From contig NC_090374.1 of NCBI RefSeq assembly GCF_036365525.1, positions 14,921,168-14,985,167 on the forward strand: 64,000 nucleotides of DNA, given 5' to 3'. The stretch's first letter is position 1. Every line of letters begins with the position of its first letter. Both the position numbers and the translations under genes were made by a program. Source of the DNA: Heterodontus francisci (Eukaryota). The notes under the pieces were generated by a model. It did not search any database. It worked only from the letters and a program-made list of their open reading frames with translations, and was not told where the DNA came from. Of the stretch, positions 19,462-40,655 are shown one piece after another.

Positions 19462-19815
19462 TATAAACCATCTGAACCCCTCTGTTATATTCCAGCCTGT
19501 AACTCACTGTTATTTATCCATTATTTAATGTACAAACTACCCAAACCCCTCTGTTATATTCCAGCCTGTAACTCACTGTTATTTATCCATTATTCTATGT
19601 ATAAACTACCCAAACCCCTCTGTTATATTCCAGCCTGTAACTCACTGTTATTTATCCATTATTTAATGTACAAACTACCCAAACCCCTCTGTTATATTCC
19701 AGCCTGTAACTCACTGTTATTTATCCATTATTCTATGTATAAACTACCCAAACCCCTCTGTTATATTCTAGCCTGTAACTCACTCGTGTCTGATGTCTGT
19801 GTATAAACCATCCCA
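19462..19815. repeat. 69-bp tandem repeat, about 4.7 copies, with alternating A/B variants
   Basis: tctgttatattccagcctgtaactcact starts at 19481, 19550, 19619, 19688 and 19757. Confidence 0.95.
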
Positions 19816-19938: not shown

Positions 19939-20322
19939 AGTTTTCTGCTAATGGTTGGACAATGAGCACTGCGGGTGATGTGAGTGTTGAGGAAGGAGGG
20001 TCCGCTGTCTTGCCGTGTACTTTCACTCACCCACACACTGATCAGACGGTCACCGGCTCTGTGATATGGTACAAAGGCCGTTACAATGTTATTTTTAAGT
20101 GTACATATTCTGGTCCGGGCCATTCACAGAGTGAGCTGTGTGAGAATGTGATACAGCAGGACGGCGGGAATCGATTAAGATTCGTGGGGAACTTCAGTAA
20201 CAAAGATGTCTCAATAATGATGGAGCGGCTGATCCGGGCGGACAGCGGTCCTTATCAGTGTCGTGTGGAGCTCACTGTTGGACAATTTCAAACACTGAAA
20301 CTAACGAGTCTGAGAGTGGAAG
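19939..20322 (+). CDS. Siglec-15-like receptor, V-set Ig exon 1 (phase 1-1)
   Basis: Acceptor ttctctctctctccacag|, donor G|gtgagg, 384 nt, open. Protein WTMS...AVLPCTFTHPH...W...FKC...SELC...RFVGN..KDVSI..ERL..AD...YQCRVE resembles the Siglec-15 V-set as recalled (AVLPCTFTHPH, FRC..SELC, YFCRVE). Confidence 0.9.
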
Positions 20323-20344
20323 GTGAGGAACAATATTCAGGGGC

Positions 20345-20600
20345 TGCAGCTGCCCCGATAGCTCAATGGCTAAAGGCTCCACCTGGTCTGGTCCTGAACC
20401 ACATGGGTAAATAAACTCTCAGCAATCCCGGGCTTTGAAAGGGGAATATTGCCCGGGATTCCTGCTCCTGATCACTCTTCAGACACTCCTGCAGGAAGGT
20501 GTCTTATTGGACATTGAATAAGACAATGGGCCAGCATGTGATGCTCTCCACAGTCAAATAGTCCATTGCCACTCATTGACCAGGCTTGTGCTGTAAGGAA
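20345..20600 (+). mobile_element. Old tRNA-derived SINE (LF-SINE-like)
   Basis: ccgatagctcaatgg head and gggattcctgctcctgatcac core. An inverted relative lies at 34350-34575. Confidence 0.45.
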
Positions 20601-21625
20601 GGCCATCTGGGTGAGATCAGTAATAATATTTTAGGATAATGAGCTATTTCAGTTTGGACATTGGGTAAGTGCAGCATGTCCATCTCAGTCTCAGTGCTGT
20701 AGGCCTGCAGTGTCCAGCTCAAAGCTGATTGGACCTGTTCCACCACTTCATATATTCTCAGTGGAGAATTGGCAGGTGGATCACAGGGAGACGATGTCAA
20801 TTGGGTCATTGCTGCTCAGCTCACACTTCAGGGCAGTACCGAGGGAGTGCTGCACTGGCTGAGGTGCCACTTTAACCTTCCTCCAGTGTTGCCCCTCAAA
20901 TCGATTGAATCGTCTGGGCATTTCTGGGACCAATGGGAAATGATATTTAACCGAGACAAATGCAGTGTGATGCGGGTAGGTAGGATCAACACGGAATTCA
21001 CTGAACATTTACAGGGAATAATACAGAAAGTGGCTGAGAGAGAAAAGGATCGAGACTGTTAATGTACACACATCACTCAAAATTCACAACCAATGCAGTG
21101 AAGCCATTGACAAAACAAACAGGGCATTGGGTTGTATTAACAAAACCATTCAGTACAAGTCAAACCACTTCCCACTTTCTGCTAGTCTGAGAAACGTCCC
21201 TGACCTCTTACCCTCTGTTTCCTGTTTTGTCACCATCTTTCAATCTGTTCTGCTACCCGGCCCCCTGAGCCCACAATCCCTGGGATCTCCACTGGCTGAG
21301 TACTACACTGGGCAATGCCTCTACCTACTGGACCACAGGGAGAGCTCAGAACTGAAATAAATTAAAGTTCTCATCAAGACCTGGATTTTGCTGCCTCACT
21401 GTGTGGTGGAGGGAGGTTCAATTGAAACATTTAAAAGGGAATTAGATTGAAATAAAGGAAGAATGTGCAGGGTTTTGGGGAGAAGGCGGGGGGAATAGCA
21501 GGAAGTGAATTGCTCTTTCGGTGAGCCGGTGCAGACATGTTGGGCTGAATGGTCTCCTTCTGCAGTGTAGCAATTCTGTGATCTGTGAAGACACTGATCC
21601 ATTCTAATGTCTGTCCTTTCCTCAG

Positions 21626-21976
21626 CTGCTAGTGGAAATGTCTCAGTGGTGACTGGGACCGAGGGAGCTTCAGTTACATTGCCCTGTATGTTCACACCCA
21701 GGAGTTACCGCACCCTGTCCACTGTTACATGGATGAGGAAGGAGCCCTACCAACACATAGTCACATTCAGAGCCCAATCAAATGGATCTTGGACAACTGC
21801 AAATGGTGGAAATCGGTACGAGCTCATCGGGAATCCACAGGAGGGAAACGCCTCAACCAGGATAAACCAGCTGAGTGTGAATGACAATCACCCTTACCTG
21901 TGTCTAGTGGAATACACATCATTGGACAATTATCAACATCTGATCCAGACTGAGACACAGCTGCTGGTTGTACATG
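21626..21976 (+). CDS. Siglec-15-like receptor, second V-set Ig exon (phase 1-1)
   Basis: Acceptor ttctaatgtctgtcctttcctcag|, donor G|gtaaga, 351 nt, open. G.SVTLPC.FT...W.RKEPY...RYELIGNP..GNAS..I..L...D...YLCLVE. Confidence 0.88.
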
Positions 21977-22054
21977 GTAAGAAACCATTCCCACATTCTC
22001 CAGTGTATAGGGGTTGTACAAGAGGGTGAGCAGTGTAATATAAAACACTCATCA

Positions 22055-22355
22055 GCTGTGGCTCAGTGGTTATCACTCTCACCTCTGAGTCAGTCGGTTG
22101 TGGGTTCAAGACACTCCAATGCAATACTGATGGAATGTAACACTGTTTAAGGTACTGTGTATGAGAAGAGATATTAAAGTAAGGCCTTCTCTGGAAGAGT
22201 ATGGGAGTTGACCTAATGTCCTGGTCAATATTTATCTCTGAACCAACATCATCAAACCATAGTCTGATAATTATCTCATTGCTGTTTATGGGATCTTGCT
22301 GTGTGCAAATTATCTGCTGTGTATCCTGCATTAAAACAGTGACTACACTTCAAAA
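22055..22355 (+). mobile_element. DeuSINE (SacSINE1-like)
   Basis: tgtggctcagtgg..ctctgagtcag..gggttcaag head, Deu-core remnant, acagtgactacacttcaaaa tail. Confidence 0.75.
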
Positions 22356-23074
22356 ACAAAGTTCTGTCATTCACTGACTTCCTGGCTGACCTGCATCTTA
22401 ACTCCATTTAATGAACTTGTTTCTGGAACCCTTCCTACCCTTGTCGAACAAAATCTATCAATCTCAGTGTTGAAATTTTCAATACATTCCCAGCATCAAT
22501 AGCTTTTCCAGGGAGAGTTTCAGATTTCCATTATCCTTTGTGTGAAGAAGTCCTTCCTGACATCACCCCAAACAGCCTAGCTCTAATTTGAAGGTTATGG
22601 CCCCTTGTTCTGGACTCTCCCACCAGAGGAAATAGTTTCTCTCTATCTGTCCGGTGCCAGGGATCGGGACATCGGCTCAGGGCTGGAGAGGAACTTGCAG
22701 TGGGAGGGGGAGGATCCAGTTGTCATCATCCCCATGGGTACCAACAACGTATTTATAGAACCAGGAAAAAGGTTCTGCAAAGCGAGTATGAGCAGCTAGA
22801 AGCTAAATTAAAAAGCAGGACCACAAAGGAAATAACCTCTGGGGTATTACCTGAGCCACGAGCATATTGGCGGAGGGTAAATAAGATTAGATAGTTAAAT
22901 GCATCGCTCAAAGAGTGATGAGGGAGAACTGGGTTTTGATTTATGGGGCACTGGCACCTGTACTGGGGAATGTGGGAGCTGTACCGTTGGCACGGTCTTC
23001 ATCTGAACCATGTTGGGACCAGTGTTCTGTCGAGTCATATAACTAGGGCAGTAGAGAGGGCTTTTACACTAAAA

Positions 23075-25762
23075 GGAAGGATGAATGAGAATGGACAGAG
23101 ACTGCTTGAGTTGTGTACCTATCATAACCTCTGCATCACCAACTTGTTCTTTCACACTAAACCCTGTCACCAGGTTTCTTGGAGGCACCCAAGATCACGT
23201 CGTTGGCACCAGCTGGACCTCATCGTCACAAGGTGAGCCTCTCTAAACAGCGTTCAAATCACACGCAGCTTCCACAGTGCGGACTGCGACACCGACCACT
23301 CCCTGGTGTGCAGCAAAGTTAGACTCAAACCAAAAAAGCTGCATCACTCCAAGCAGTAGGGCCGCCCGCGCATCAACACGAGCAGAATTTCTTATCCACA
23401 GCTGTTACATAAGTTTCTAAATTCACTTGAAAAAGCCCTTCAAAACACTCCCTCAGGGGATGCAGAGACCAAGTGGGCCCACATCAGAGACACCATCTAT
23501 GACTCAGCAATGACCACCTATGGCAAACGTGTGAAGCAGAATGCAGACTGGTTTCAATCTCACTTTGAAGAGCTGGAACCTGTCATAGCCGCTAAGTGCA
23601 TTGCACTGCTGAACGACAAGAAAGCCCCCAGCGAGTTAACATCCGTAGCACTTAAAGCAGCCAGAAGCACTGCACAAAGAACAGTCAGGCGCTGCACAAA
23701 TGACTACTGGCAACACCTATGCAGTCATATTCAGCTGGCCTCTGACACCGGAAACATCAGAGGAATGTTTGATGGCATTAAGAGAGCTTTTGGGCCAACC
23801 ATCAAGAAGATCGCCCCCCCTCAAATCTAAATCAGGGGACACAATCACTGACCAAGGCAAGCAAATGGACCGCTGGGTTGAGCACTACCTAGAACTGTAC
23901 TCCAGGGAGAATGCTGTCACTGAGACTGCCCTCAATGCAGCCCAGTCTCTGCCAGTCATGGATGAGCTGGATGTACAGCCATCAAAATCGGAACTCAGTG
24001 ATGCCATTGATCCTTTAGCCAACGGAAAAGCCCCTGGGAAGGACGGCATTACCCCTGAAATAATCAAGAGTGCCAAGACTGCTATACTTTCAGCACTGTA
24101 CAAACTGCTTTGCCTGTGCTGGGATGAGGGAGCAGTACCACATGACATGCGCGATGCCAATATCATCAACCTCTGTAAGAACAAAGGTGACCGCGGTGAA
24201 TGCAACAACTACTGTGAAATCTCCCTGCTCAGCATAGTGGGTAAAGTCTTCGCTCGAGTTGCTTTAAACAGGCTCCAGAAGCTGGCTGAGCGTGTCTACC
24301 CTGAGGCACAGTGTGGTTTTCGAGCAGAGAGATCCACCACTGACATGCTGTTCTCCCTTCGTCAGATACAGGAGAAATGCCGTGAACAACAGATGCCCCT
24401 CTACGTTGCTGTCATTGATCTCACCAAAGCCTTTGACCTCATCAGCAGACGTGGTCTCTTCAGACTACTAGAAAAGATCGGATGTCCACCAAAGCTACTA
24501 AATATCATCACCTCATTCCATGACAATATGAAAGGCACAATTCAGCATAGCGGCGCCTCATCAGACCCCTTTCCTATCCTGAGTGGCGTGAAACAGGGCT
24601 GTGTTCTCGCACCCACACTGTTTGAGATCTTCTTCTCCCTGCTGCTCTCTCATGTGTTCAAGTCTTCAGAAGAAGGAATTTTCCTCCACGCAAGATCAGA
24701 TGGCAGGTTGTTCAACCTTGCCCGTCTAAGAGCGAAGACCAAAGTACAGAAAGTCCTCATCAGGGAACTCCTCTTTGCTGACGATGCTGCTTTAACATCT
24801 CACACGGAAGAGTGCCTGCAGAGTTTCATTGACAGGTTTGCGGCTGCCTGCAATGAATTTGGCCTAACCATCAGCCTCAAGAAAACGAACATCATGGGAC
24901 AGGACGTCAGAAATGCTCCATCCATCAATATCAGTGACCATGCTCTGGAAGTGGTTCAAGAGTTCACCTAGCTGGGCTCAACTATCACCAGTAACCTGTC
25001 TCTGGATGCAGAAATCAACAAGCGCATGGGAAAGGCTTCCACTGCTATGTCCAGACTGGCCAAGAGAGTGTGGGAAAATGGCGCACTGACACGGAACACA
25101 AAAGTCCGAGTGTATCAAGCCTGTATCCTCAGTACCTTGCTCTACAGCAGCGAGGCCTGGACAAAGTATGTCAGCCAAGAGCGACGTCTCAATTCATTCC
25201 ATCTTCACTGCCTCCGGAGAATCCTTGGCATCAGGTGGCAGGACCGTATCTCCAACACAGAAGTGTTCGAGGCGGCCAACATCCCCAGCTTGTACACACT
25301 ACTGAGTCAGCGGTACTTGAGATGGCTTGGCCATGTGAGCCGCATGGAAGATGGCAGGATCCCAAAGGACACATTGTACAGCGAGCTCGTCACTGGTATC
25401 AGACCCACCAGCTGTCCATGTCTCCGCTTTAAAGACGTCTGCAAACGCGACATGACGTCCTGTGACATTATTCACAAGTCGTGGGAGTCAGTTGCCAGTG
25501 ATCGCCAGAGCTGGCGGGCAGCCATAAAGGCGGGGTAAAGCGTGGCGAGTCGAAGATACTGAGCAGTTGGCCGGAAAAAGAACAGAAGCGCAAGGGGAGA
25601 GCCAACTGTGTAACAGCCCTGACAACCAATTTTATCTGCAGCGCCTGTGGAAGAGTCTGTCACTCTAGAATTGGCCTTTATAGCCACTCCAGGCGCTGCT
25701 CCACAAACCACTGACCACCTCCAGGCGCTTACCCATTGTCTCTCGAGACAAGTAGGCCAAAG
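23075..25762 (+). mobile_element. RTE-clade LINE, 5'-truncated and disrupted
   Basis: NENGQRLLELC...SWRHPRSRRWHQLD endonuclease end. RT PEAQCGFRAERST, GVKQGCVLAPTLF, LLFADD. C-terminal C2H2 (CSACGRVCHSRIGLYSH). Confidence 0.92.
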
Positions 25763-27099
25763 AGTGGGGGGAAGAGATCATGTGAGAGGAGATGTGGTAA
25801 ATCAAATGAAAACGATAAGGTAATCGAGCAGAGTGGCGAATTAAGTAGTGATAACCAGAGTGCGGCAAGCTTAAGAGTGTACCAGCAGAGAAGACCAGAG
25901 ATGGCAGAAATGGTATAAAGAGAGAGTTAAAGGCGCTGTATCTGAATGCACACAGCATTCGTAATGAACAGTTGCTACACTGTATGACAGAGTATACAGG
26001 AAGAAATAAATGGGGCCTGTAAGAAAGGTACTGCAATCACATGGGTGATTTTAATCTATATAGATTGGACGAATCAGATTGGCAAATGTTGCTTGAAAAA
26101 TGAGTTCACAGAGTGTATTTCGGACAATTTCACAGAGCAGTACGTTCTGGAACCAACTAGGGAGCATGCTATTCTAGACCTGGTAATGTGCAATGAGACA
26201 GGATTGGTCATTAACCTCATGGTAAAGGAGCCTCTAGGTGACAGTGATTATAACATGAGAGAATTTCACATTCAGTTTGAAGGGGAGATGTGTGGGCCTA
26301 AGACGAGTGTTTAAACCTAAATAAAGGTAAATACAAGAGTATGCCAGCAAAAAATATAAAATCAGACTGTAAAAGCTTCTACAGGTACGTAAAAAGGAAA
26401 AAGACAAATGTGGGTCCATTACAGGCAGAGTAAGGACAATTTATAATGGGAATAGAGAAATGGCAGAGAAGCTAAATAATTATTTTGTGTCTGTCTTCCC
26501 TGAGGAAGATATAAGAAATTTCCCAGAATTAGAGATCCAAGGGGTTAGGGGGAATGAGGAATTGAAGGAAATTAGTATTAGTAAGAAGATTGTATTGGAG
26601 AAATTAATGGGGCTGAAGGTTGATAAGTCCCCGGGACCTGATATTCTACATCCCAGAGTGTTTAAAAAGGTAGCTATGGAGATAGTGGATGCATTGGTGA
26701 TCATCTTCCAAAATTCTATAGATTCTGGAGCAATTCCTGCAGATTGGAAGGTTGCAAATGTCATCCCACTATTTAAGAAGGGAGGGAGAGAAAACAGGGA
26801 ATTACAGACCTGTTAGCCTTACATCGGTCATTGGGAAAATGCTAGAATCTATTCTAAAGGATGTGATAAATGGACACTTGGATAATAATGATCTGATTGG
26901 GCATAGTCAACATGGATTTATGAATGGGAAATCATGTTTGATGAACCTGTTGAAGTTTTTTGAGGATGTTACTAACAGAATTGATAAAGCAGAGTGGTAT
27001 ACCTGGATTTTCAGAAGGCTTTTGATAAAGTCCCCCACAGGAGGTTGTTTAGCAAAATTAAAGCACATGGGATAGGAGGTAATCTACTGGCATGGATTT

Positions 27100-28267
27100 C
27101 TTTCTTTTTCTTTTTCTTTTGGGCCTCCTTATCTCGAGAGACAATGGATACGCGCCTGGAGGTGGTCAGTGGTTTGTGAAGCAGCGCCTGGAGTGGCTAT
27201 AAAGGCCAATTCTGGAGTGACAGGCTCTTCCACAGGTGCTGCAGAGAAATTTGTTTGTTGGGGCTGTTGCACAGTTGGCTCTCCCCTTGCGCCTCTGTCT
27301 TTTTTCCTGCCAACTACTAAGTCTCTTCGACTCGCCACAATTTAGCCCTGTCTTTATGGCTGCCCGCCAGCTCTGGCGAATGCTGGCAACTGACTCCCAC
27401 GACTTGTGATCAATGTCACACGATTTCATGTCGCGTTTGCAGACGTCTTTATAACGGAGACATGGACGGCCGGTGGGTCTGATACCAGTGGCGAGCTCGC
27501 TGTACAATGTGTCTTTGGGGATCCTGCCATCTTCCATGCGGCTCACATGGCCAAGCCATCTCAAGCGCCGCTGACTCAGTAGTGTGTATAAGCTGGGGGT
27601 GTTGGCCGCTTCAAGGACTTCTGTGTTGGAGATATAGTCCTGCCACCTGATGCCAAGTATTCTCCGAAGGCAGCGAAGATGGAATGAATTGAGACGTCGC
27701 TCTTGTCTGGCATACGTTGTCCAGGCCTCGCTGCCGTAGAGCAAGGTACTGAGGACACAGGCCTGATACACTCGGACTTTTGTGTTCCGTGTCAGTGCGC
27801 CATTTTCCCACACTCTCTTGGCCAGTCTGAACATAGCAGTGGAAGCCTTACCCATGCGCTTGTTGATTTCTGCATCTAGAGACAGGTTACTGGTGATAGT
27901 TGAGCCTAGGTAGGTGAACTCTTGAACCACTTCCAGAGCGTGGTCGCCAATATTGATGGATGGAGCATTTCTGACATCCTGCCCCATGATGTTCGTTTTC
28001 TTGAGGCTGATGGTTAGGCCAAATTCATTGCAGGCAGACGCAAACCTGTCGATGAGACTCTGCAGGCATTCTTCAGTGTGAGATGTTAAAGCAGCATCGT
28101 CAGCAAAGAGGAGTTCTCTGATGAGGACTTTCCGTACTTTGGACTTGGCTCTTAGACGGGCAAGGTTGAACAACCTGCCCCCTGATCTTGTGTGGAGGAA
28201 AATTCCTTCTTCAGAGGATTTGAACGCATGTGAAAGCAGCAGGGAGAAGAAAATCCCAAAAAGTGTG
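27100..28267 (-). mobile_element. RTE-clade LINE 3' fragment with uninterrupted ORF
   Basis: 335-aa stop-free ORF at 27166-28173 (LLFADD to CSTCGRACHSRIGLYSH). A-rich tail appears as a T-run at 27098-27120. Confidence 0.92.
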
Positions 28268-28651
28268 AAAAAAACTAATTGAAACCTACAAAATACTTAA
28301 AGGGATAGACAGAGTAGATGCAGCCATGATGTTTCCCCTGGGTGAGGAGTCTCGAACCAGGGGACACAATTTCAAAATAAGTGGGAAGCCACTTAGGACA
28401 GAAATGAGGAGAGATTTCTTTACTCAGAGGGTTGTGAATCGTTGGAATTCTCTACCCCAGAGGGCTGTGGAAGCTCAGTCATTGAGTGTGTTTAAAGCAG
28501 AGATTGACAGATTTCTAAATACCAATGACATAAGGGGATATGGGGATAATGTGGGAAAAATGCATTGAAGTGGATGATCAGCCATGATCATCTTGAATGG
28601 CAGGGCAGGCTGGATGGGCTGAATGGCCTACTCCTGCTCCTATGTTCCTAT

Positions 28652-31015
28652 GAAGGCAGAGTTATCTAAAGTGAACTGGGAAACTAGGTTAAAAGGTAGG
28701 ACAGTAGAGATGCAGTGGCAGACTTTTAGGGAGATATTTAATAACTCTCAGCAAAGATTTATTTGAGTGGAAAGAATGATTCTTTGAGAAACATGCATCA
28801 TCCGTGGTTAAATAAGCAAGTTGAGGATAGTATCAAATGAAAGAAACACTGTATAAATCTGCAAAGGTTAGTGCTGTGTCAGAAGCTTGGACAGTCTGAG
28901 AGAGAACTAGCTGGTGATATAAAAACAGATTGTAAGGGTTTCTACATGTATTTAAATAAGAAAAGAGTAACTAAAGCTAGAATTGGTTCTCTAGAGTGTG
29001 AGTCTGGGTAATTGATCATGGTAAACAAGGAAATAGCGGAGGTGTTGAACAGGTATTTTGTATCTGTTTTCACTGCAGAAGACTGAGAAAACCTGCCAAA
29101 GATACTTGAAAATCAGGAGGTGAAAGGGAGGGAGAAATTTAAAACAATCACCATCACCAGGGAAAAGCTGCTGGGAAAACTATTAGGCCCAAAGGTTGAC
29201 AACTCCCCAGGATCAGATGGTCTGCATCCTAGGGTCTTAAAAGAAGTGGCTGCAGACAGAGTAGAGGCTTTGTTTATAATCTTCCAAAATTCATAGATTC
29301 TGGAAGGGTCTGAGCGGATTGCAAAATAGCAAATGTAAAATCTTCATTCAAGAAAGGAGGGAGACAGGAAGCAGGAAACTATAGGCCAGTTCGTCTAACA
29401 TATATCATAGGGAAATTGCTAGAATCCATTATTAAGGAGTTTATAGAAGGATACTTCGAAAATCATAATGGGATCTGACAGACTCAACATGGTTTTGTAA
29501 AAGGGAAATCATGTTTAACTAATTTATTAAAGTTCTTTGAGGAATTCACAAGCGAGGTGGATAAAGGGGAATCTGTAGTTGTGGTGTACTTGGACTTCCA
29601 AAAGGTATTTGATAAGGTGTCACATAAAAGGTTACTACACAAGATAAGAGCACATGGTGTAGGAAGTAACATATTAGCATGAATAAAAGACTAGTTAGTT
29701 AACATGAAGCAGAGAGTAGGGATAAATGGGTCTTTTTCAGGTTGACAAGATGTAACAAGTGGAGTGCCACAGGGTTCAGTGCGGGTGCCTCAACTATTTT
29801 AAATTTATGTCAATGAATTGGGGCGGCACAGTGGTTAGCACCGCAACTTCACAGCTCCAGGGACCCGGGTTCGATTCTGGGTACTGCCTGTGTGGAGTTT
29901 GCAAGTTCTCCCTGTGACCGCGTGGGTTTTCGCCGGGTGCTCCGGTTTCCTCCCACAGGTGATAGGTAAATTGGCCATTGTAAATTGCTCCTAGTGTAGG
30001 CAGGTGGTAGGGAATATGGGATTACTGTAGGGTTAGTCGGGACAGACTCAGTGGGCCAAAGGGCCTGTTTCAGTGCTGTATCGCTAAATAAAATATAAAT
30101 AAAAAGAGACCAAATGTATGGTTGCTAAATTTGCCCAGGACACCAAGATAGGAAGTAAGCTGTCAAGAGGACATAAAGAGTTTACAAAAGGATATAAATA
30201 GATTAAGTGAGTGGGTAAAAATTTAGCAGATGGAGTATAATGTGGGAAAATGTGAACTTGTCCACTTTGACAGGAAGCTTAGAAAAGCGGTATACTATTT
30301 AAATGGAGAGAGATTGCAGAACCCGGTGGTACAGAGGGATCTGGGTGTCCTGGTACATGAATCACAAAAGGTTAATATGCAGGTACAGCAAGTGATTAGG
30401 AAGGTAAATGGAACATTGATGTTTATTGCAAGGGAAATTGTGTGTCAAAGTGGGTAAGTTTTACTGCAGCTGGACAGGGCCTTGTGAGACCACATCTGGA
30501 GAACTGTGTGCAGTTTTGGTCTCCTTATTTGAAAAGGATATAATTGTGTTAGAAGCAGTTCAGAGACGGATCACTCGACTAATTCTGGGGATGGAGAGCT
30601 TATCTTATGAAGAAAGGTTGAACAGGTTGGGCCGAGACTTGTTGGAGGTTAGAACAATGAGAGGTGATCTTACTGAAACATATAGGTTCCTGAGGGGACG
30701 TGATAGAGTGTATACTGGGAGGGTGTTTTCTCTTGTGGGGGAGACGAGAACTAGGGGACACAGTTTAAGAATAAGAGCTCTCCCTTTTAAGATGGCGATG
30801 AGGAGAATTTCTTTTTCTCGAACGGTCATTAGTCTGTGGAATTCTGTTCCCCAGAAAGCAGTGGAGGCAGGGTCAATGAGTTTATTCAAAGCTGAGTTAG
30901 ATGGATTTTTGATAGACAAGGGAGTCAAGGGTTATGGGGGGGGGCAGACAGGAAAGTGGAGTTAGGATCACAACCAGATCAGGAATAATCTTATCGAAAG
31001 GCGGAGCAGGCTCAC
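28652..31015 (+). mobile_element. Degenerate CR1 ORF2 and 3'UTR
   Basis: [39 protein letters not shown]. Confidence 0.85.
29819..30100 (+). mobile_element. V-SINE (HE1-like)
   Basis: gggcggcacagtggttagcac...gttcgattc (A/B boxes), V-domain gtggagtttgcaagttctccc...ggtttcctcccaca, A-rich tail. Confidence 0.85.
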
Positions 31016-31234
31016 AAGAACAAATGAAATAGCAGCAGGAATAGACCATGTGACCCGTCAAGCCTGCTCCGCCATTCAATATGATCATGGCTGATCTTGG
31101 GCTTCAATTCCACTTTCCCGCCCAGCCTCAGTCTCAGCCTTAAATATATTCAGTGATGGAGCATCCGCAACCCTCTGGGGTAGAGAATTCCAAAGATTCA
31201 CAACCCCTTGAGTGAAGTAATTTCTCATCTCAGT

Positions 31235-32073
31235 TGTCATACTGGGCCCCCCACCTGCCAAGAATGAGGCACATTAATTTCACCACACGGACATTAAATT
31301 TCAAATTGTTGTTGGGAAGAAGAGAAGGCCTGTGACAATGGGTTACCAGGCCCCTGGCTGGAAAGATATTTTTGGAACAAAGGAGCTATCCCCTGCTCCA
31401 ATACAATCCACAAACAGATGTGGTCAGACCAGTTAGTCACATGACTAACCTGCTTGGTTGGCATCTCGATTTATTTCTGATTTGTACAGTTTTGAACTGA
31501 GAATCTGCAGAAAACTGTTTACTCCCAGACTGAAGAAGACCTCCTGTCTGTCTGTCTGCCTGCTCCCATCGCTTTCTCACCAGCTTCTGAATCCATTGAA
31601 GACACATGAACCCCAAGAGAGAAAAGTCTCCTACAGTGAACAAGGTTTAAGAAGAATACTGGGCCCCAATGAAAAGCAAGATCTGCTTACAAGCAAGGAC
31701 TCTGCAGTGAGTTCGAAGACCTGTAACAAAAACTCTTCAGATATTGCTGTAAGCTTTTACGCTTTATTTCTTCTGCTCTTTTCTGTCCCTATCTGCATGT
31801 GTATACCACGTATGCATGCTAGCATGGGCGCGTCGTGCATCCATAGGCATTAACTGAATTAGAGTTTAAGTTTAATAAAATTTCACTTTTCTTCTTTAAA
31901 CCTAAGAAAACCTGTTTGTGCTGGTTTCATTGCCTCATAATTGGAAAGCTGTGAACAAGAGTTCACCAAGGGAGAGCTAAAAACACAGTGTATTTGAAAT
32001 AAAACCCTGTTACAGTAATACCAGGTGAAGGCCGAAAGGGAATCCTAGACCTCTTTCTCACCTGATCGTAACA
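31235..32073 (+). mobile_element. Solo LTR
   Basis: TGTCAT...CGTAACA termini, perfect 4-bp TSD cagt (31231-34 and 32074-77), internal AATAAA. Confidence 0.88.
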
Positions 32074-32102
32074 CAGTCCTTATCCTGAGACTGTGCCCCT
32101 GT

Positions 32103-33122
32103 TGTTACGAGGGTTTCCATTTTTTGTTATAACTTGAGAATCTATATTTTAAAAACTGAAAAGGATTCCATGGATGCTGGAATCTTCAAGAAGCTGAACT
32201 TTGGATGTTTTTTTATGGGAAGGTCAACAGAAGGTTGACCATTAAACAAATTTTACTGAAAAACATCGGTTTGCAAATAACCCAGCAGGGTGTTTGTGCT
32301 GTGACTCTGAAAAGGATGTTTACAAGGAAATGACAAACCAAGATTTCAGGTTGTCATACAGCCTGCCTCTGGAAAAGTTTTTGTTTCATTTTGAACTCTT
32401 AAGAAAGGCCAGTGGTTGTTTGGCCAAGAACAGAAAGAAATTTGCTTCCTGACCTGCCAGAAGAAAACAGCTCTCTCTTTAAAGAATTCCTGCATCAAGT
32501 TGTATTGTTGCCTCCCTGTATTTGAAGAAATCCTGAATGTTTTCAGAAACCTTGCATCTTTGAAAGAACTTTGCATAGAATGTGCAAGAATTGAAACCTT
32601 TGTTACTGCACATCTGATGTAAGACTTATGCAATGCCTTCCGTAGCTGCATCTCTTGAAAACCTACCTAGACTGTTCATCAACATTGTTGGAAAGAACTG
32701 TTCCAGGACGATTCCCAGTGGCAGCCACCTATTCGCCTTTGGGACACCTCGCCAACACAGAGGACTTCCATACCTTCTCTTCAGTCTCAGTTTTTTATTC
32801 CTTCCAACTGTCACAGTTGTAAACAAAAATCATTTTTTCTCCCGGTTAACCGGTTGTTTATGTGAGTGTGTGAGGGCGAGGATAAAAATAAAGGGTTTTA
32901 ATATTTCAATTCGTGCATATGTTTACTTCATTATTGGTTAAGACTTAGTTTATAATAAATGGATAATTTTGTTGTTTATTAAAAAATATCTGGTTGGTGT
33001 GCTTTATTCTGGAGTAAAATAGATTGGCTGTTTCAGTAAGTGGGAAAATTTAAATACATGTTGTGACCTGTGGAGAAGTGGGACTGAATTAACAGTGCAC
33101 TCCTCCTGCCTCGGTTATAACA
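32103..33122 (+). mobile_element. Solo LTR (different family)
   Basis: TGTTACG...TATAACA termini; CR1 sequence resumes on both sides. TSD is not clean. Confidence 0.75.
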
Positions 33123-33624
33123 TCTTGTTTTAGATTCCCCGCATGGCGGAAACAATCTCTCAGTGTCTACCCGATCCAGAACTTTCAGAATCATGTACAT
33201 TTCAATGAGATGCCTCACATTTTTCGAAACTCCAGAGAATGTAGTCCCAATTTACACAGCCTTTCATCATAGGACAACCCCCTCATCCCAGGGACCAATT
33301 TAGTGAACCTTCGCTGCAACCCCTCCAATGCAAGTATATCCTTTTTTAAATGTGGAGACCAAAAATGCACACAGTATTCCAGATGTGGTCTTGCCAAAAC
33401 CCTGTACAATTGTAGCAAGACTTCTTTATTCCTGTACTCCAATCCCCTTGCAATAAAGGCCAACATGCCATTTGCCTTCCTAACTGCTTGCTGTACCTGC
33501 ATGCTATCTTTTTATGCTCGAAGGGTGACAGTATTAAACCTTTTCATTGTAAATACAACAGTATTAACTTGTCACTGTAAATACTACTGTATTAATCCCT
33601 GTCACTGTAAGTTTTTTTAATAGA

Positions 33625-33912
33625 GTCATAGAAAGATACAGCACCGAAACAGGCCCTTCGGCCCACCGAGTCAGCACCGACCATCAACCACCCATTTATA
33701 CTTATCCTACATTAACCCCATATTCCCTCTCACATCCCTACCTTCCCTCAATTCTCCTACCATCTACCTACACTGGAGGCAATTTTACAATGGCCAATTT
33801 ACCTATCAACCCTCAAGTCTTTGGCTGTGGGAGGAAACCGGAGCACCCGGAGGAAGCCCACACGGTCACAGGGAGAACTTGCAAACTCCGCACAGGCAGT
33901 ACCCAGAATTGA
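33625..33912 (-). mobile_element. V-SINE (HE1-like), 5'-truncated
   Basis: V-domain and tail in reverse orientation, similar to 29819-30100. Confidence 0.8.
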
Positions 33913-34140
33913 ATTTCTACAGGATTAATCCCTGTCAGTGTAAGGAACTATATTATTCATACACTCCAATTGCCATTTTCATTCACAGTCCATACTCTTC
34001 GCTTAATTGAGGTCCATCACGATATTTCTGTCCTGCAATCGAGATTCACAATTATCCACAGACTTTGATTAATTGTCTCTGCATTGTTGGTCTCTCACCT
34101 TTGCTTGTCTCTAATTTGATTTCTTTCTCTTTCTGTTCAG

Positions 34141-34240
34141 CTGCAGAGACTTTCCCCATTGCGATATTGTGCATTCCACTTGGAGTGAAACTCCTCGCCC
34201 TTATAGTGATGTGGATTATTTTGTTGAGGGATAAATCCAG
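34141..34240 (+). CDS. Siglec-15-like receptor, transmembrane exon with intramembrane Lys (phase 1-2)
   Basis: Strong acceptor ctaatttgatttctttctctttctgttcag|, donor CAG|gtatgt. Encodes AAETFPIAILCIPLGVKLLALIVMWIILLRDKS(R). Phase matches the V2 exon. Confidence 0.85.
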
Positions 34241-34349
34241 GTATGTAATATTGCTGGGAGACTCTTGTCTTTAAATGCCTGAAGCTTGATTCATGGGTGA
34301 GCTTTGGTGGTGATTCAAACACTTGAGCCATTCTGGTCGATGAACAACC

Positions 34350-34575
34350 ACACAGTGCATGTCCAGCAGAGGTCGCTGGATCCCAGCAGGATCAGGAACC
34401 CTGGGCAATGTTTCTTTCCCTATCCCAGTAGCTCTTGGACCAATTGGAGAGCCCCGACTGCAGCCCAGCTGGGATTGGCTAACTCAGCCCAGACATGGGA
34501 TGGAAACTGGCCCCTTTCTGGTCTGTATGATTCAGCTCCTCACAGCAGGAACTTGCTGAGCTATCGGGGACCTGA
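34350..34575 (-). mobile_element. LF-SINE-like element
   Basis: ggctaactcagcccagac..ggaaactgg..ttctggtctgtatg..tcag..ctgagctatcgg resembles the LF-SINE head in reverse. Confidence 0.5.
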
Positions 34576-35159
34576 TTAAATCTCCCAGACCACCTGTATT
34601 CACTATTGTCTAGTTTAATCTGCAAGGTTAAGCCCTCAGGGCATATTATGGTTCAAAACTGATTGAGTTGAATTTGATTGCAGTGCTGGGTTATTGACAG
34701 TCAGATTCCTGTTCACTTTCCAACCTCAGTCTTTCCCCAAGGCTTTCTGGAAAACACCAACCACTCACCTCAAGACCCGGAAAAAGAATAAAACACTCTG
34801 GGGATTGGCTGCTGTTCAGATGATGAGAATGATGGTTATCACAGTGTTGAAAATGATTTGCAGTTCCCTTTGACTCAGTTTTTGGTCACCTGTCCTCATA
34901 TCTCCTCATGTGACTCGGTGTTCCATTTTGCCTGATTGTGTTCCTGTGAAGCACATGTTAAAAGTGCTATATAAATGCAAGCTTTTGTTCTTGCTATATA
35001 AACAAAGTGACTCCTGACATCGCAGCGGTCTGCTGACATAATCAGAGCGCTCCAAGCTGTGAACATGTGCAAACGGTCGCCTGCGCTGAGATGCTGCACA
35101 TACTCAGCCTACGTCTTGCCAGGACTAACTGGTGCATGCGAAGGAAAACATTCTCCCCC

Positions 35160-35640
35160 CTCGCCCACTCACTCCCCACTCCTCGCTTCCAGCCACCCTG
35201 CTCTCCAGCTGCTCACTCCCCTCTTCCGCCCACCATCCTGCTCTCCAGCTGCTCACTCCCCTCTTCCGCCCACCATCCTGCTCTCCAGCTGCTCACTCCC
35301 CTCTTCCGCCCACCATCCTGCTCTCCAGCTGCTCACTCCCCTCTTCCGCCCACCATCCTGCTCTCCAGCTGCTCACTCCCCTCTTCCGCCCACCATCCTG
35401 CTCTCCAGCTGCTCACTCCCCTCTTCCGCCCACCATCCTGCTCTCCAGCTGCTCACTCCCCTCTTCCGCCCACCATCCTGCTCTCCAGCTGCTCACTCCC
35501 CTCTTCCGCCCACCATCCTGCTCTCCAGCTGCTCACTCCCCTCTTCCGCCCACCATCCCGCTCTCCGCCGCTCACTCCCCGCTTTCCCCTCACCATCCCG
35601 CTCTCTGGCCACTCACCCCCCCACTTTCCCCACCCCCCCC
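35160..35640. repeat. 40-bp C-rich tandem repeat, about 9 near-perfect copies plus variants
   Basis: Unit ccatcctgctctccagctgctcactcccctcttccgccca. Confidence 0.95.
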
Positions 35641-35829
35641 CATCCCTCCAGATGCTAGCTCCAAGGCCCGCTGCTTCCTTCCTCTCGGCTACTCGATCCC
35701 ACATTCGATCGTTCCTCACCGCACTGCCCAGAGAAGCCAGGTGGGCCTGGAGGGGTGATGGAACGATATTGGAGTGAGTGGCCGAGAGGATGGAAGCGGC
35801 GCGGCCTGGAGCTAGTGTCTGGAGAGATG

Positions 35830-36690
35830 GTGGGGTAAGCGGGAAGTGAGCAACCGGAGAGTAGGAACCGGGGGAAGCGGGGAGTGAGCAGACGGAGAGT
35901 GGGATGGGGGGGGAAGTGGGGAGTGAGCGGCCGGAGAGTGGGATGGGGGGGGGGAAAGTGGGGAGTGAGCGGCCGGAGAGTGGGATGGGGGGGGGGAAAG
36001 TGGGGAGTGAGCGGCTGGAAAGTGGGATGGGGGGGGGGAAAGTGGGGAGTGAGCGGCCGGAGAGTGGGATGGGGGTGGAAGCGGGGAGTGAGCGGCCGGA
36101 GAGTGGGATGGGGGGGGGGAAAGTGGGGAGTGAGCGGCCGGAGAGTGGGATGGGGGGGGAAGCGGGGAGTGAGCGGCCGGAGAGTAAGATGGCGGGGGGG
36201 ATACGGGGAGTGAGCGGCCAGAGAGTGAGATGGGGGGGGGGGGGGAAGGGGGAGTGAGCGGCCAGAGAGTGAGATGGGCGGGAAAGCGGGGAGTCAGCGG
36301 CCGGAGAGTGGAATGGGGGGGGGAAGGGGGAGTGAGCGGCCGGAGAGTGGGATGGGGGTAGAAACGGGAAGTGAGCGGCTGGAGAGTGGGATGGGGGGGA
36401 AGCGGGGAGTGAGGGGCCGGAGAGTAGGATTTGGGGGAAGCGGGGAGTGAGCAGCCGGAGAGCTTGATCGGGTGTGGGGGCGAAGCAGGGATTGAGCGGC
36501 CGGAGAGCTTGATCCGGTGTGGGGGGGAAGCAGGGAGTGAGCAGCCGGAGAGCAGGATGGGGGGGGGGGGGGGAAGTGGGGAGTGTGCAGCCGGAGAGTG
36601 GGATGGGGGGGGGGAGCGGGGAGTGAGCGGCCGGAGAGCAGGATGGGGGGTGAAGCGGGAAGTGAGTGAGCGGACAGCGGGATGGCACTG
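35830..36690. repeat. About 40-bp G-rich tandem repeat, about 20 copies
   Basis: Unit ggggagtgagcggccggagagtgggatg(g)n(a)aagt/gc. Confidence 0.95.
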
Positions 36691-37087
36691 AAACCTCACT
36701 GAATTACGGAGGGTGTGCAGCACTGTCAGAGGTGCTGTCCTTCTGAGAAAGTTTAAACAGTGCAACGTTCTCCGAGTATCAACCAAAACATGTCCATTGT
36801 CTGCTGTCATGTTTGCTTATGAAATGACAGTCACTGCTCCTAAAGTAATTCACTTTAGGTGAATTAAGATGACTAGCTACTAAATAACTGGCGCATGCGC
36901 AGGAGGGAGGGGAGACTGTTGGGGGTGGGATGGCGGTGGCAGCATGACAATATTTGAGTGGATCTTTGGGTTGAAGTTGTTTATCTGTGATAAACAGATA
37001 AACCATCATTAATCCTGGCAGCTGCCTGAACGTCGCAGACACTGATGTTACAGTGGAACAGGCTGCATTTTCGCATGTGCTAGTACT

Positions 37088-37101
37088 GCGCCACCTGATG
37101 G
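37088..37101 (-). promoter_or_regulatory. CTCF-like motif
   Basis: Minus strand CCATCAGGTGGCGC differs from the consensus CCASYAGRKGGCRS at one position. Confidence 0.5.
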
Positions 37102-37331
37102 TTGCGTTGTCAGCAAACGCCGCCCTTTATAAATGCAAGTTGTTGTTCTTGCTGAAAACAGGAACAACAATCAGACCCATTGTGTCAGTGTTTAACACTG
37201 ATAATCTAATCTGTTTTTAAATACATGGGGAATCCTATGTAAACAGCTGCAGGTTGTATATGGCGGTTCTGAAAATGCTCTTATTTTACTGTTAATATGG
37301 CTCATTTTATTTAATCTTGTTTTGTCCCCAG

Positions 37332-37347
37332 AAAGGAGCAGGACTGA
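37332..37347 (+). CDS. Siglec-15-like receptor, terminal coding exon ((R)KEQD*)
   Basis: Acceptor ctcattttatttaatcttgttttgtccccag|, phase 2: A AAG GAG CAG GAC TGA. Followed by non-TE UTR-like sequence that is duplicated downstream. Confidence 0.7.
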
Positions 37348-37539
37348 TCCATCGCAGGAGGCTGAGAAACTGAATGTTCAAACCGCAATATAAACCTGTT
37401 CCACTCGCCCTGCACTGAATCTCATCCAGCAATTTAAACTGGACTTGCTTTGGTCATCATTCACTGTGTGATCCTGGGTACTGAGTACAAAATTCTTCCT
37501 GTTAATCAGCTATTCAGCAAGGTTCTGCATCACACTGTG

Positions 37540-37705: not shown

Positions 37706-38129
37706 TACTCTGAATGGAATCTGAATGTGAACATTCTCAATATCAGTCTGTCTAAATGGCCAGGCTTTATTTATGGTGTAAACAGTGGGAGAGCTCATGG
37801 GGCAGAGGTGACTGTGAGTAGGACAGGTTTGAAACCCCAATTATTCCAGCTGCTTTGCTCAGGGAACTGGCTGCTGTTTCTAGCTCTTCGGCTGTGATGG
37901 GAGATTCTGCTGGAGGTCAGTCAGCTTTCAATAACTGATCTCAGAGTGAATCTGTGCTTTTACTGTCAGTCGATCAAAGTTACATGATGGAGCTGCAATG
38001 ATTGTGAACACTGTACACAATCCTGGTAGCTCCATCATGTAACTTTCATGTGCTCTTGTGAAGTTCCTTTGGGACAATTCGCTACATTAAAGGTGTTATA
38101 TAAATGCCAGTTATCGTTGTTGCTTCTAC

Positions 38130-39269: not shown

Positions 39270-40655
39270 NNNNNNNNNNNNNNNNNNNNNNNNNNNNNNN
39301 NNNNNNNNNNNNNNNNNNNNNNNNNNNNNNNNNNNNNNNNNNNNNNNNNNNNNNNNNNNNNNNNNNNNNNNNNNNNNNNNNNNNNNNNNNNNNNNNNNNN
39401 NNNNNNNNNNNNNNNNNNNNNNNNNNNNNNNNNNNNNNNNNNNNNNNNNNNNNNNNNNNNNNNNNNNNNNNNNNNNNNNNNNNNNTATCTGTATGTGTGG
39501 TGTGTGTGTGTCTCTGTTTGTATATCTGTATGTGTGGTGTGTGTGTATCTGTGTTGTGTGTGTGTCTGTGTGTGTGTATTTGTTTGTATATCTGTGTGTG
39601 TAGATTGTGTGTCTGTGTGTGTGTGTATCTGTGTGTATCTGTGTCTGTATATCTGTGTGTGTGGTGTGTGTGTCTGTGTGTGTGTATCTGTTTGTATATC
39701 TGTGTGTAGATTGTGTGTCTGTGTGTAGATTGTGTGTCTGTGTGTGTTTGTGTGTGTGTGTGTGTATCTGTGTTGTGTGTATCTGTCTGTGTGGTGTGTT
39801 TGTATATGTGTGTGTGTGGTGTGTGTGTGGTGTGTGTGTATCTGTTTGTATATCTGTGTGTGTGGTGTGTGTGTATCTGTTTGTATATCTGTGTGTGGTG
39901 TGTGTATCTGTGCGTGTTTGTGTGTGTGTNNNNNNNNNNNNNNNNNNNNNNNNNNNNNNNNNNNNNNNNNNNNNNNNNNNNNNNNNNNNNNNNNNNNNNN
40001 NNNNNNNNNNNNNNNNNNNNNNNNNNNNNNNNNNNNNNNNNNNNNNNNNNNNNNNNNNNNNTGTATCTCTGTGTGTGTCTGTGTATGTATGTGTGTGTAT
40101 CTGTTTGTATATCTGTATGTGTGGTGTGTGTGTTTCNNNNNNNNNNNNNNNNNNNNNNNNNNNNNNNNNNNNNNNNNNNNNNNNNNNNNNNNNNNNNNNN
40201 NNNNNNNNNNNNNNNNNNNNNNNNNNNNNNNNNNNNNNNNNNNNNNNNNNNNNNNNNNNNNNNNNNNNNNNNNNNNNNNNNNNNNNNNNNNNNNNNNNNN
40301 NNNNNNNNNNNNNNNNNNNNNNNNNNNNNNNNNNNNNNNNNNNNNNNNNNNNNNNNNNNNNNNNNNNNNNNNNNNNNNNNNNNNNNNNNNNNNNNNNNNN
40401 NNNNNNNNNNNNNNNNNNNCTGTGTGTGGTGTGTGTATCTGTGCGTGTTTGTGTGTATCTGTTTGTATATCTGTGTGTGTGGTGTGTGTGTGTATCTGTG
40501 TATGTGTGTATCTGTGTGTGTGTATCTGTTTGTATATCTGTGTGTGTGTGTGTATCTGTTTGTGCGTCTGTGTGGGTGCGTATCTCTGTGTGTGTCTGTG
40601 TATGTATGTGTGTGTATCTGTTTGTATATCTGTGTATGCGTCTGTGTGTGGTGTG
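39270..40655. repeat. (TG)n-rich complex microsatellite with assembly gaps
   Basis: gtgtgtatctgtttgtatatctgtgtgt-type motifs interrupted by N runs. Confidence 0.95.

What the first reader, a model, noticed from the sequence alone, without database searches (positions are those of the whole stretch)
19939..37347. Siglec-15-derived activating receptor with a non-canonical V-V-TM(Lys)-short-tail architecture
Seen: four phase-compatible exons (1-1, 1-1, 1-2, 2-stop) splice into a stop-free reading frame of about 283 aa. It has two V-set domains, almost no stalk, a TM helix IAILCIPLGVKLLALIVMWIILL with a central Lys, and a tail RDKSRKEQD with no tyrosine. The 12-kb V2-TM intron is almost entirely TE and shows no C2 exon. 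Known: Siglec-15 is V-set + C2-set + TM Lys (GFKALL) that pairs with DAP12, and Siglecs normally have one N-terminal V-set. Inference: a cartilaginous-fish Siglec-15 offshoot in which the V exon was duplicated and C2 lost, giving a purely adaptor-dependent activating receptor, possibly part of a lineage-specific family.
Basis: partly seen in the sequence, partly recalled or inferred. Interest (0 to 1): 0.85.

Follow-up and report, generated by a model that had tools for sequence, protein, structure and literature searches.

The report
Shark Siglec-15-like paired activating receptor
This is one copy of a large shark and ray gene family descended from the sialic-acid receptor Siglec-15, with two V-type domains, a lysine in the membrane span and almost no tail; it has near-identical inhibitory sister genes, which matters because Siglec-15 is a lone, conserved gene in other vertebrates.

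Summary
Four canonical, phase-compatible exons encode V-set, V-set, a Lys-bearing TM helix and the tail RKEQD.

- **Splicing:** transcript contigs of the species show the V1-V2 splice in four runs. One contig joins V2 to the exact start of the TM exon.
- **V1:** Siglec-15-type. It has the essential Arg, the extra Cys pair and FTHPH, and human Siglec-15 is its best solved match (E 2e-16).
- **TM exon:** it carries the PLGxK motif shared by teleost, bird and mammal Siglec-15.
- **No C2 or ITIM exon** was found anywhere in the window.

The interpretation needs correcting on four points.

1. The V-V tandem is not new to this offshoot. Its V2 is sister to domain 2 of V-V-C2 proteins of chimaera, sharks and rays, so only the C2 loss is specific.
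2. The gene belongs to a multigene family found in every elasmobranch genome sampled. Activating, ITIM-bearing and soluble forms have 89-94% identical V1 domains within one species, like Siglec-5/14.
3. RefSeq already predicts this architecture (a Heterodontus francisci "Siglec-15" of 333 aa, with an identical TM exon). I found no paper describing the family.
4. This copy has no leader exon in the window. At five diagnostic positions every RNA contig carries a paralogue's letter, so its own expression is unproven.

DAP12 pairing and sialic-acid binding are inferences.

The parts
19939..20322 (+). V1 exon (phase 1-1). A Siglec-15-type V-set domain with 4 Cys, the FTHPH motif, and Arg in YQCRVEL.
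   Evidence: Translation. Pfam V-set 48.1 bits. Human Siglec-15 7ZOZ E 2.1e-16 with the Arg and both extra Cys aligned. Spliced to V2 in RNA contigs.
20323..21625 (+). Intron 1 (1303 nt, GT..AG).
   Evidence: Joint 20320>21624 (cut +2) in all four runs. Depth is near zero outside a repeat-like block at 21390-21543.
21626..21976 (+). V2 exon (phase 1-1). A V-set domain with Leu in place of the Arg (YLCLVEY), 2 Cys and 3 N-glycosylation sequons.
   Evidence: Translation. Pfam V-set 55.5 bits. Clade with domain 2 of chondrichthyan V-V-C2 proteins, 100/97. Of 88 family V2 domains, 81 have Leu at this position and none has Arg.
21977..34140 (+). Intron 2 (12.2 kb), largely retrotransposon-derived, with no C2-like exon.
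   Evidence: RVT_1 ORFs at 23700-24968 (+) and 27169-28173 (-). No C2 hit by tblastn.
23174..23232 (+). Alternative 59-nt cassette exon taken from a LINE fragment. It reads GFLEAPKITSLAPAGPHRHK and breaks the frame towards the TM exon.
   Evidence: The loose end behind 21978 in run X1, TTCTTGGAGGCACCCAAGATCACGTCG, matches this place. RefSeq model P0022 has the same junction.
34141..34240 (+). TM exon (phase 1-2): a short stalk, then the helix IAILCIPLGVKLLALIVMWIILL with Lys, then RDKS.
   Evidence: Translation. The loose end behind 21976 equals its first 19 bases. It is 100% identical to the TM of H. francisci P0241. The PLGxK motif is shared with Siglec-15 of other vertebrates.
37332..37347 (+). 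End of the coding sequence in the TM isoform: R(split)-KEQD-stop.
   Evidence: P0241 and P0007 have the same tail.
37332..37393 (+). Second reading of the last exon, ...SRTDPSQEAEKLNVQTAI-stop. It is reached either by skipping the TM exon (a soluble form) or through an AG 4 nt downstream (exon start 37336).
   Evidence: Translations. The tail of H. francisci P0235 is identical, and the soluble forms of Pristiophorus (P0003) and Heptranchias (P0026) are similar. No read evidence in this species.

Best explanation
The locus is a member of an elasmobranch multigene family that descends from the Siglec-15 lineage. It encodes the activating half of a paired-receptor system.

Shown: the exon chain; two V-type domains; a membrane Lys in the Siglec-15 PLGxK context; a tail of about 9 residues with no tyrosine; and ITIM-bearing paralogues in the same species whose V1 domains are 89-94% identical.

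Inferred mechanism:
- V1 keeps the F-strand Arg and the extra disulphide of the Siglec-15 sugar-binding domain, and binds a sialylated ligand.
- V2 has Leu at that position and sits almost directly on the membrane, so it acts as a spacer or second contact surface.
- The Lys recruits a DAP12- or DAP10-type adaptor that supplies the signalling motif.
- The ITIM paralogues see the same ligands and signal the opposite way.
- Skipping the symmetrical exons or shifting the last acceptor gives soluble or longer-tailed variants.

Evolution: the ancestor was V-V-C2-TM(Lys), as still found in chimaera, sharks and rays. This subfamily lost C2 before sharks and rays split. Amniote Siglec-15 has a single V domain.
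For: - Exons and domains.
- Splices: V1-V2 in four runs, and V2 to TM in one contig.
- Siglec-15 signature in V1: with residue roles from PMC10264397 and PMC7226832.
- TM motif alignment.
- Same architecture in other species: Rhincodon, Amblyraja, Leucoraja, Rhinoraja, Mobula, Hemitrygon, Narcine and H. francisci.
- V-V-C2 relatives: Pfam and phmmer.
- Tree: V2 clade sister to long-form domain 2, 100/97.
- Long and short forms sit on the same chromosome-sized contig in Heptranchias, Mobula hypostoma and Narcine.
- Activating and inhibitory V1 domains interleave in one H. francisci clade, and the label needs at least 7 changes on the family tree.
- AlphaFold model of the closest full-length paralogue, P0241: two confident beta-sandwiches plus a TM helix, pLDDT 81. 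The best fold matches are tandem-V proteins: JAML, scFv, pIgR and VCBP3.
Against: - No signal-peptide exon lies in the 19.9 kb upstream within the window.
- This copy matches no RefSeq protein exactly. The best are 94% in V1 and 95% in V2.
- At 20027, 20177, 21838, 21892 and 21906 every RNA contig carries a paralogue's letter. The spliced contigs may therefore all come from sister genes. Contigs drop rare variants, so this does not show that the copy is silent.
- The runs are only guessed to be RNA, although the contrast between exon and intron depth and the GT..AG joints fit RNA.
- The position of V1 relative to bony-vertebrate Siglec-15 is unresolved in the tree. Two groupings that would fix it were not rejected: p-AU 0.37 and 0.34.
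- Ligand and adaptor are inferred from other species only.
Confidence: 0.6

Rival explanations
1. This particular copy is a recent, 5'-truncated or silent duplicate (a pseudogene in the making). It still has open exons, and the function lies in its annotated sister genes.
For: - No leader exon in the window.
- Not among the RefSeq proteins of the species.
- All RNA contigs carry paralogue letters at five diagnostic places.
- A neighbouring family remnant at 42108 shows that the cluster does decay.
- V2 is joined to a frame-breaking LINE cassette in one contig.
Against: - All four exons are open with canonical splice sites.
- The TM exon is 100% identical to that of an annotated gene.
- Introns here are long, so the leader may lie upstream of the window or in the 175-N gap at 13322-13496.
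- Contigs cannot show absence.
Confidence: 0.27
2. It is simply the shark orthologue of Siglec-15: one conserved gene whose second domain happens to be V-like.
For: NCBI names several of these proteins Siglec-15. V1 and the TM carry the Siglec-15 hallmarks.
Against: - There are many copies per genome, at least seven in H. francisci, with activating, inhibitory and soluble forms.
- V-V-C2-TM(Lys) genes, closer in architecture to Siglec-15, coexist on the same chromosomes.
- V1 forms its own elasmobranch clade.
Confidence: 0.06
3. It belongs to another V-type innate receptor family (TIM, CD300/pIgR, NITR, skate MDIR or JAML), and the likeness to Siglec-15 is superficial.
For: - NCBI names include pIgR-like, HAVCR1-like and JAML-like.
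- V2's best solved sequence match is TIM-2, E 1.4e-09.
- JAML is the best fold match for the two domains together.
Against: - V1 scores 63 bits on Siglec-15 against 29 bits or less on TIM, CD33 and the rest.
- V2 also hits the Siglec-15 V domain, at E 2.7e-09.
- The TM motif is of Siglec-15 type.
- Identity to JAML is only 18%.
- No protein named MDIR is among the 90 homologues, which include three skate genomes.
Confidence: 0.03

Closest known systems
Siglec-15 of bony vertebrates (human Q6ZMC9, structure 7ZOZ)
   Same: The N-terminal V-set has the canonical disulphide, the extra C'-C'' disulphide, Arg after the F-strand Cys, and the FTHPH stretch (PMC10264397). The TM Lys sits in a (P)LGxK context. 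In Siglec-15 this Lys is needed for DAP12/DAP10 association (PMC7226832, citing Angata 2007).
   Different: The second domain is V-set, not C2. The tail is 9 residues, without the YEN motif of tetrapod and lungfish tails. The family is multicopy with ITIM-bearing sisters, whereas Siglec-15 is listed among the highly conserved Siglecs (PMC7226832).
Chondrichthyan V-V-C2-TM proteins (Callorhinchus XP_042192165, Mobula hypostoma XP_062903801; also the ITIM form of Heptranchias, XP_067838218)
   Same: Tandem V domains, with domain 2 forming a clade with this gene's V2 (100/97). A Lys is present in the TM of the Callorhinchus and Mobula proteins. They lie on the same chromosomes as the short forms.
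   Different: They keep a membrane-proximal I/C2-type domain. Their domain 1 forms a separate clade from this family's V1.
Primate paired Siglecs: Siglec-5/14 and Siglec-11/16
   Same: An activating member with a charged TM residue and no signalling tail, an inhibitory ITIM member, and nearly identical ligand-binding domains within one species (PMC4042635, PMC5701461).
   Different: The primate pairs are CD33-related Siglecs with V-C2n ectodomains, and gene conversion has been shown for them at DNA level. Here the lineage is Siglec-15-like, the ectodomain is V-V, and conversion is only suggested by mosaic protein patterns.
JAML (AMICA1) and other tandem-V receptors
   Same: Best structural match for the two-domain ectodomain (Foldseek E 4e-15).
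   Different: 18% identity, no TM Lys, and a different signalling tail. This is fold-level likeness only.

Membership tests
Siglec-15 (orthologue) | N-terminal V-set domain with the essential Arg on strand F (human R143) | tested here: met
   YQCRVEL aligns to human YFCRVEF. The role of R143 is described in PMC10264397 and PMC7226832.
Siglec-15 (orthologue) | Extra C'-C'' disulphide (human C95-C104) besides the canonical pair | tested here: met
   V1 has 4 Cys, and FKC...SELC aligns to human FRC...SELC. This is shown by sequence only.
Siglec-15 (orthologue) | Second extracellular domain of C2-set type | tested here: not met
   The second domain is V-set at 55.5 bits. No C2 exon is in the window. 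A paralogue's model shows two V-type sandwiches.
Siglec-15 (orthologue) | Lys in the transmembrane helix | tested here: met
   IPLGVKLLAL. The PLGxK motif is shared with teleost, bird and mammal Siglec-15.
Siglec-15 (orthologue) | One-to-one orthology (phylogeny, single copy, synteny) | tested here: inconclusive
   V1 forms its own elasmobranch clade with an unresolved backbone. A clade of V1 with the long-form domain 1 is not rejected, p-AU 0.37. H. francisci has at least seven paralogues.
Siglec-15 (orthologue) | Sialic-acid binding and DAP12/DAP10 association | not testable with these tools
   Needs binding and co-precipitation experiments.
Paired activating/inhibitory Siglec-type receptors | Activating and ITIM-bearing genes of one species share near-identical ligand-binding domains | tested here: met
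   The window's V1 is 94% identical to P0241 (activating) and 89-93% to P0244, P0240 and P0001 (ITIM). All H. francisci V1 domains fall in one clade with the two types interleaved.
Paired activating/inhibitory Siglec-type receptors | The activating member has a charged TM residue and a tail without a signalling tyrosine | tested here: met
   the tail is RDKSRKEQD or RDKSRSRTDPSQEAEKLNVQTAI, with no Tyr in either.
Paired activating/inhibitory Siglec-type receptors | Ectodomains kept alike by gene conversion | not tested
   Only mosaic protein patterns were seen. The paralogues' DNA was not obtainable.
Skate MDIR family | Sequence membership | tested here: inconclusive
   No protein named MDIR, and none from Raja eglanteria, is among the 90 homologues of a skate family member. 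No MDIR sequence was in hand for a direct comparison. From my own knowledge, MDIR domains are reported as I/C2-type.

The most novel reading that the evidence does not exclude
In cartilaginous fishes the Siglec-15 lineage is not a lone conserved gene. It is a fast-turning-over cluster of tandem-V paired receptors with activating Lys-TM, inhibitory ITIM and soluble forms. Ectodomains are homogenised within species, and the sugar-binding Arg has been lost repeatedly (absent in about 20 of 79 V1 domains). On this reading the cluster fills the role that CD33-related Siglecs play in mammals, which would push the paired-Siglec strategy back more than 400 million years.
Probability: 0.5. Interest if true: 0.7.

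Novelty: new variant of a known kind. Interest (0 to 1): 0.55.

Why it matters
Siglec-15 is treated as one of the few Siglecs conserved across vertebrates, and it is a drug target in bone disease and cancer.

A Siglec-15-derived family in sharks and rays that has two V domains, lacks C2, and comes in activating, inhibitory and soluble versions would show three things:
- The ancestral gene had a tandem-V ectodomain.
- The lineage can behave like the fast-evolving CD33-related Siglecs.
- Paired sugar-sensing receptors are old.

It also gives a natural experiment on what the second domain and the tail contribute. For this one locus the gain is smaller. It is an unannotated extra copy whose own expression is not shown, and RefSeq already predicts the same architecture in sister genes.

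Tried and rejected
- **Leader exon:** I searched upstream with tblastn (word size 2), a blastn of the paralogous leader, and a motif scan. None was found. The only leader-like exon lies downstream at 42108.
- **C2 or ITIM exons:** searched anywhere in the window; none found.
- **Reads:** The TM-to-tail junction and the soluble junction were not tested with reads. The runs are contigs, not raw reads, and their RNA status is a guess.
- **V1 placement:** placing V1 against bony-vertebrate Siglec-15 failed. The backbone is weak and the AU tests do not discriminate. No named TIM, CD300, NITR or MDIR sequences were in hand for a wider tree.
- **Literature:** searches for Siglec-15 with shark, cartilaginous, elasmobranch and elephant shark, for DAP12 in cartilaginous fish, and for MDIR found no description of this family. 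The library lacks most subscription journals.
- **Joined exons:** The RefSeq paralogue P0241 stood in for the structure model.
- **Not attempted:** The third homologous-protein search and the protein atlas were not used.
- **Bacterial-type scan:** the promoter and terminator scan at 41800-42300 is not meaningful for a vertebrate and found nothing.


Full report
**What is in the sequence**

- V1: 19939-20322.
- V2: 21626-21976.
- TM exon: 34141-34240.
- Terminal coding piece: 37332-37347.

All have AG/GT borders and phases 1-1, 1-1, 1-2 and 2-stop, and none has an internal stop. Both Ig exons pass Pfam's V-set threshold, at 48.1 and 55.5 bits against a cut-off of 26. The TM exon reads AETFPIAILCIPLGVKLLALIVMWIILLRDKS, and the tail ends RKEQD. 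A tblastn of V1, V2 and TM against the window finds no further copy of any of them.

**Is the exon chain used?**

The four runs that hold the stretch come from one sample and are kept as contigs. Their type is only guessed as RNA. They behave as RNA: depth is in the hundreds to thousands over both V exons and near zero over most of intron 1.
- A GT..AG joint at 20322/21626 is present in all four runs.
- One contig runs from 21976 into CTGCAGAGACTTTCCCCAT, the exact start of the TM exon.
- Another contig runs from the same donor into a 59-nt LINE-derived cassette at 23174-23232.

One caution is important. At 20027, 20177, 21838, 21892 and 21906 every contig carries another letter than the window. 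These changes give NRFRF, GNPKEGN and NHTYLC, as in the annotated paralogues. Loose ends at 20074 and 20081 spell the NRDSWDY insertion of those paralogues. The contigs therefore prove the splice pattern for the family, not for this copy. Contigs drop rare variants, so silence is not shown either.

**What the domains are**

V1 matches the V domain of human Siglec-15 (7ZOZ) at E 2.1e-16 and 63 bits. The next solved chains (TIM-1, CD33, TIM-3, sialoadhesin) score 29 bits or less. The alignment keeps three things: the FTHPH stretch, both cysteines of the extra C'-C'' disulphide, and the Arg after the F-strand Cys. In human Siglec-15 that Arg makes the salt bridge to sialic acid, and replacing it abolishes binding (PMC10264397, PMC7226832).

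V2 matches TIM-2 (E 1.4e-09) and the V domain of Siglec-15 (E 2.7e-09), but not its second domain. It has Leu at the Arg position and only two Cys.

When the TM is aligned on the Lys, the motif (P)LGxK followed by a Leu-rich stretch recurs in sharks, rays, a notothenioid teleost, birds and mammals. Both ends of the protein therefore carry Siglec-15 hallmarks.

**Relatives**

Searching V1 alone (a read-through ORF was given as the reference so that longer proteins were admitted, and only the V1 part was scored) and then a skate family member returned 90 proteins from elasmobranch genomes. NCBI names them in many ways: uncharacterized, Siglec-15, -10, -12, pIgR-like, HAVCR1-like, CD33-like, JAML-like and A33-like.

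The same V-V-TM(Lys)-short-tail protein is predicted in Rhincodon, Amblyraja, Leucoraja, Rhinoraja, Mobula, Hemitrygon, Hypanus, Narcine and Heterodontus francisci.

The window is evidently from H. francisci or a very close relative.
[quoted passage not shown] Its TM exon is 100% identical to the window's and its V1 is 94% identical.
- P0235 has the same ectodomain and TM but the tail RSRTDPSQEAEKLNVQTAI.
- P0240, P0244, P0248 and P0001 replace the TM and tail with an uncharged TM and a long tail with several ITIM-like motifs (SCTYAEL, SCTYASI, NVIYAAV).

No listed protein is identical to the window's exons, so this copy seems unannotated.

**Origin of the two V domains**

Lungfish Siglec-15 (425 aa), a Callorhinchus protein (414 aa, once named Siglec-15) and a Mobula "Siglec-15" (402 aa) are V-V-(I/C2)-TM(Lys). 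Amniote Siglec-15 is V-C2-TM(Lys).

I built a tree of 51 V domains with IQ-TREE under LG+C20.
- The family's V2 domains form a clade (100/99).
- That clade is sister (100/97) to domain 2 of the V-V-C2 proteins of Callorhinchus, Heptranchias, Mobula and Narcine.
- The family's V1 domains form their own clade (100/98).
- Lungfish and salamander tandem V domains pair within their own lineages.

So the chondrichthyan V-V tandem predates the split of elasmobranchs and chimaeras. This subfamily's own change is the loss of C2. Both sharks and rays have the short form, so the loss came before they split.

The backbone that would place V1 relative to bony-vertebrate Siglec-15 is weak. Holding V1 with the long-form domain 1 costs 2.3 log-likelihood units (p-AU 0.37), so that grouping is neither shown nor rejected.

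Long and short forms lie on the same chromosome-sized contig in Heptranchias, Mobula hypostoma and Narcine.

**Paired-receptor character**

On a tree of 79 V1 domains, all seven H. francisci sequences (three activating, counting the window, and four ITIM) form one clade with the two types interleaved. Hemitrygon shows the same pattern. The activating/inhibitory label needs at least 7 changes on the tree, 3 of them forced by well-supported branches.

This is the pattern of Siglec-5/14 and Siglec-11/16, where gene conversion keeps the ligand-binding domains alike (PMC4042635, PMC5701461). Here conversion is only suggested by mosaic protein patterns. For example, P0240 shares the window's ELTVGQFQT stretch but carries the NRDSWDY insertion.

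The Arg of V1 is present in about 55 of 79 family members and replaced by H, G, N, S, Y, K or Q in the others. V2 never has it.

**Isoforms**

All ectodomain exons are phase 1-1, and RefSeq models in other species skip V2 or the TM exon. The window's last exon can be read in two frames.
- RKEQD-stop after the TM exon.
- ...SRTDPSQEAEKLNVQTAI-stop.

The second frame is reached in two ways: V2 joined directly to 37332 (a soluble form, as predicted in Pristiophorus and Heptranchias), or an AG four bases downstream (exon start 37336), which gives exactly the tail of P0235. Neither variant was seen in reads here.

A contig also reads through the V2 donor at about a twentieth of the exon depth. That reading ends GKKPFPHSPVYRGCTRG-stop.

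**Structure**

Instead the closest full-length paralogue, P0241, was folded with a 37-sequence alignment. The result has mean pLDDT 81 and pTM 0.74, with two beta-sandwiches mostly above 90 and a helix over residues 301-332. Foldseek's best two-domain matches are tandem-V proteins: JAML, single-chain Fv, pIgR and VCBP3. This confirms that both domains are V-type.

**Mechanism and status**

The most likely reading (about 0.6) is an activating receptor. V1 binds a sialylated ligand and the TM Lys recruits a DAP12- or DAP10-type adaptor. It is opposed by ITIM sisters with the same ligand face and tuned by soluble variants. The ligand and adaptor steps are inferred from Siglec-15 of other vertebrates.

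The main rival (about 0.27) is that this copy is a 5'-truncated or silent duplicate. No leader exon lies in the 19.9 kb upstream. There is a 175-N gap at 13322-13496, and family introns are long, so the leader may lie outside the window.

**Novelty**

The architecture is already in RefSeq predictions. I found no paper on Siglec-15-like genes of cartilaginous fishes in the library searched. I rate it a new variant of a known kind.

The scan's first-stage notes had already flagged the Arg-less V2 on this window, the leader remnant at 42 kb, and a second V-V copy on another piece of this genome.

Noticed in passing
window 42021-42172, with 42356-42487 and 44636-44774: A leader-type exon on the + strand (MGSLYVWLSAVLLSVTVRSY) with upstream 5'UTR-like sequence, 59% identical to the first exon of RefSeq paralogue P0241. 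It lies 4.7 kb downstream of the receptor's stop. It is followed within 200 bp by collinear copies of the receptor's 3'UTR: 37458-37535 at 82%, 37713-37758 at 80%, and 37876-38013 at 93.5%. At the expected phase-1 exon end the next letters are GA, not GT; the nearest GT would give phase 2. It looks like the remnant of a paralogue whose V1-to-tail part was deleted, or an assembly collapse.
   Followed up: partly
window 23174-23232: A 59-nt cassette exon taken from the endonuclease region of a LINE, read in a non-LINE frame (GFLEAPKITSLAPAGPHRHK). It is joined to the V2 donor in one transcript contig and in RefSeq model P0022. It shifts the frame relative to the TM exon, so the product would be truncated.
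   Followed up: partly
window 21977-22029: Reading through the V2 donor gives GKKPFPHSPVYRGCTRG-stop. The first eight residues are identical in a Hemiscyllium model (P0005) that also reads through. A contig covers the exon-intron border at about 5% of the exon depth. It may be a third, intron-retaining soluble form, or just unspliced RNA.
   Followed up: no
window 35168-36685: Two large G/C-rich minisatellite arrays sit in the TM-to-tail intron, with periods of about 40 and 39-81 nt and 11 and 20 copies. They produce long, spurious Pro/Ser-rich ORFs on both strands.
   Followed up: no
window 19475-19784: A 69-nt tandem repeat (4.5 copies, 95% alike) ends 155 bp upstream of the V1 acceptor.
   Followed up: no
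window 39270-40700: A TG/CA-rich simple repeat is interrupted by three runs of N (216, 132 and 283 bases). Assembly in this part downstream of the gene is uncertain.
   Followed up: no
family proteins P0026 and P0205 (Heptranchias) and others: The sugar-binding Arg of V1 is replaced in about 20 of 79 family members, often by His, and several of these are soluble or activating forms. This recalls the repeated Arg loss seen in primate CD33-related Siglecs.
   Followed up: partly
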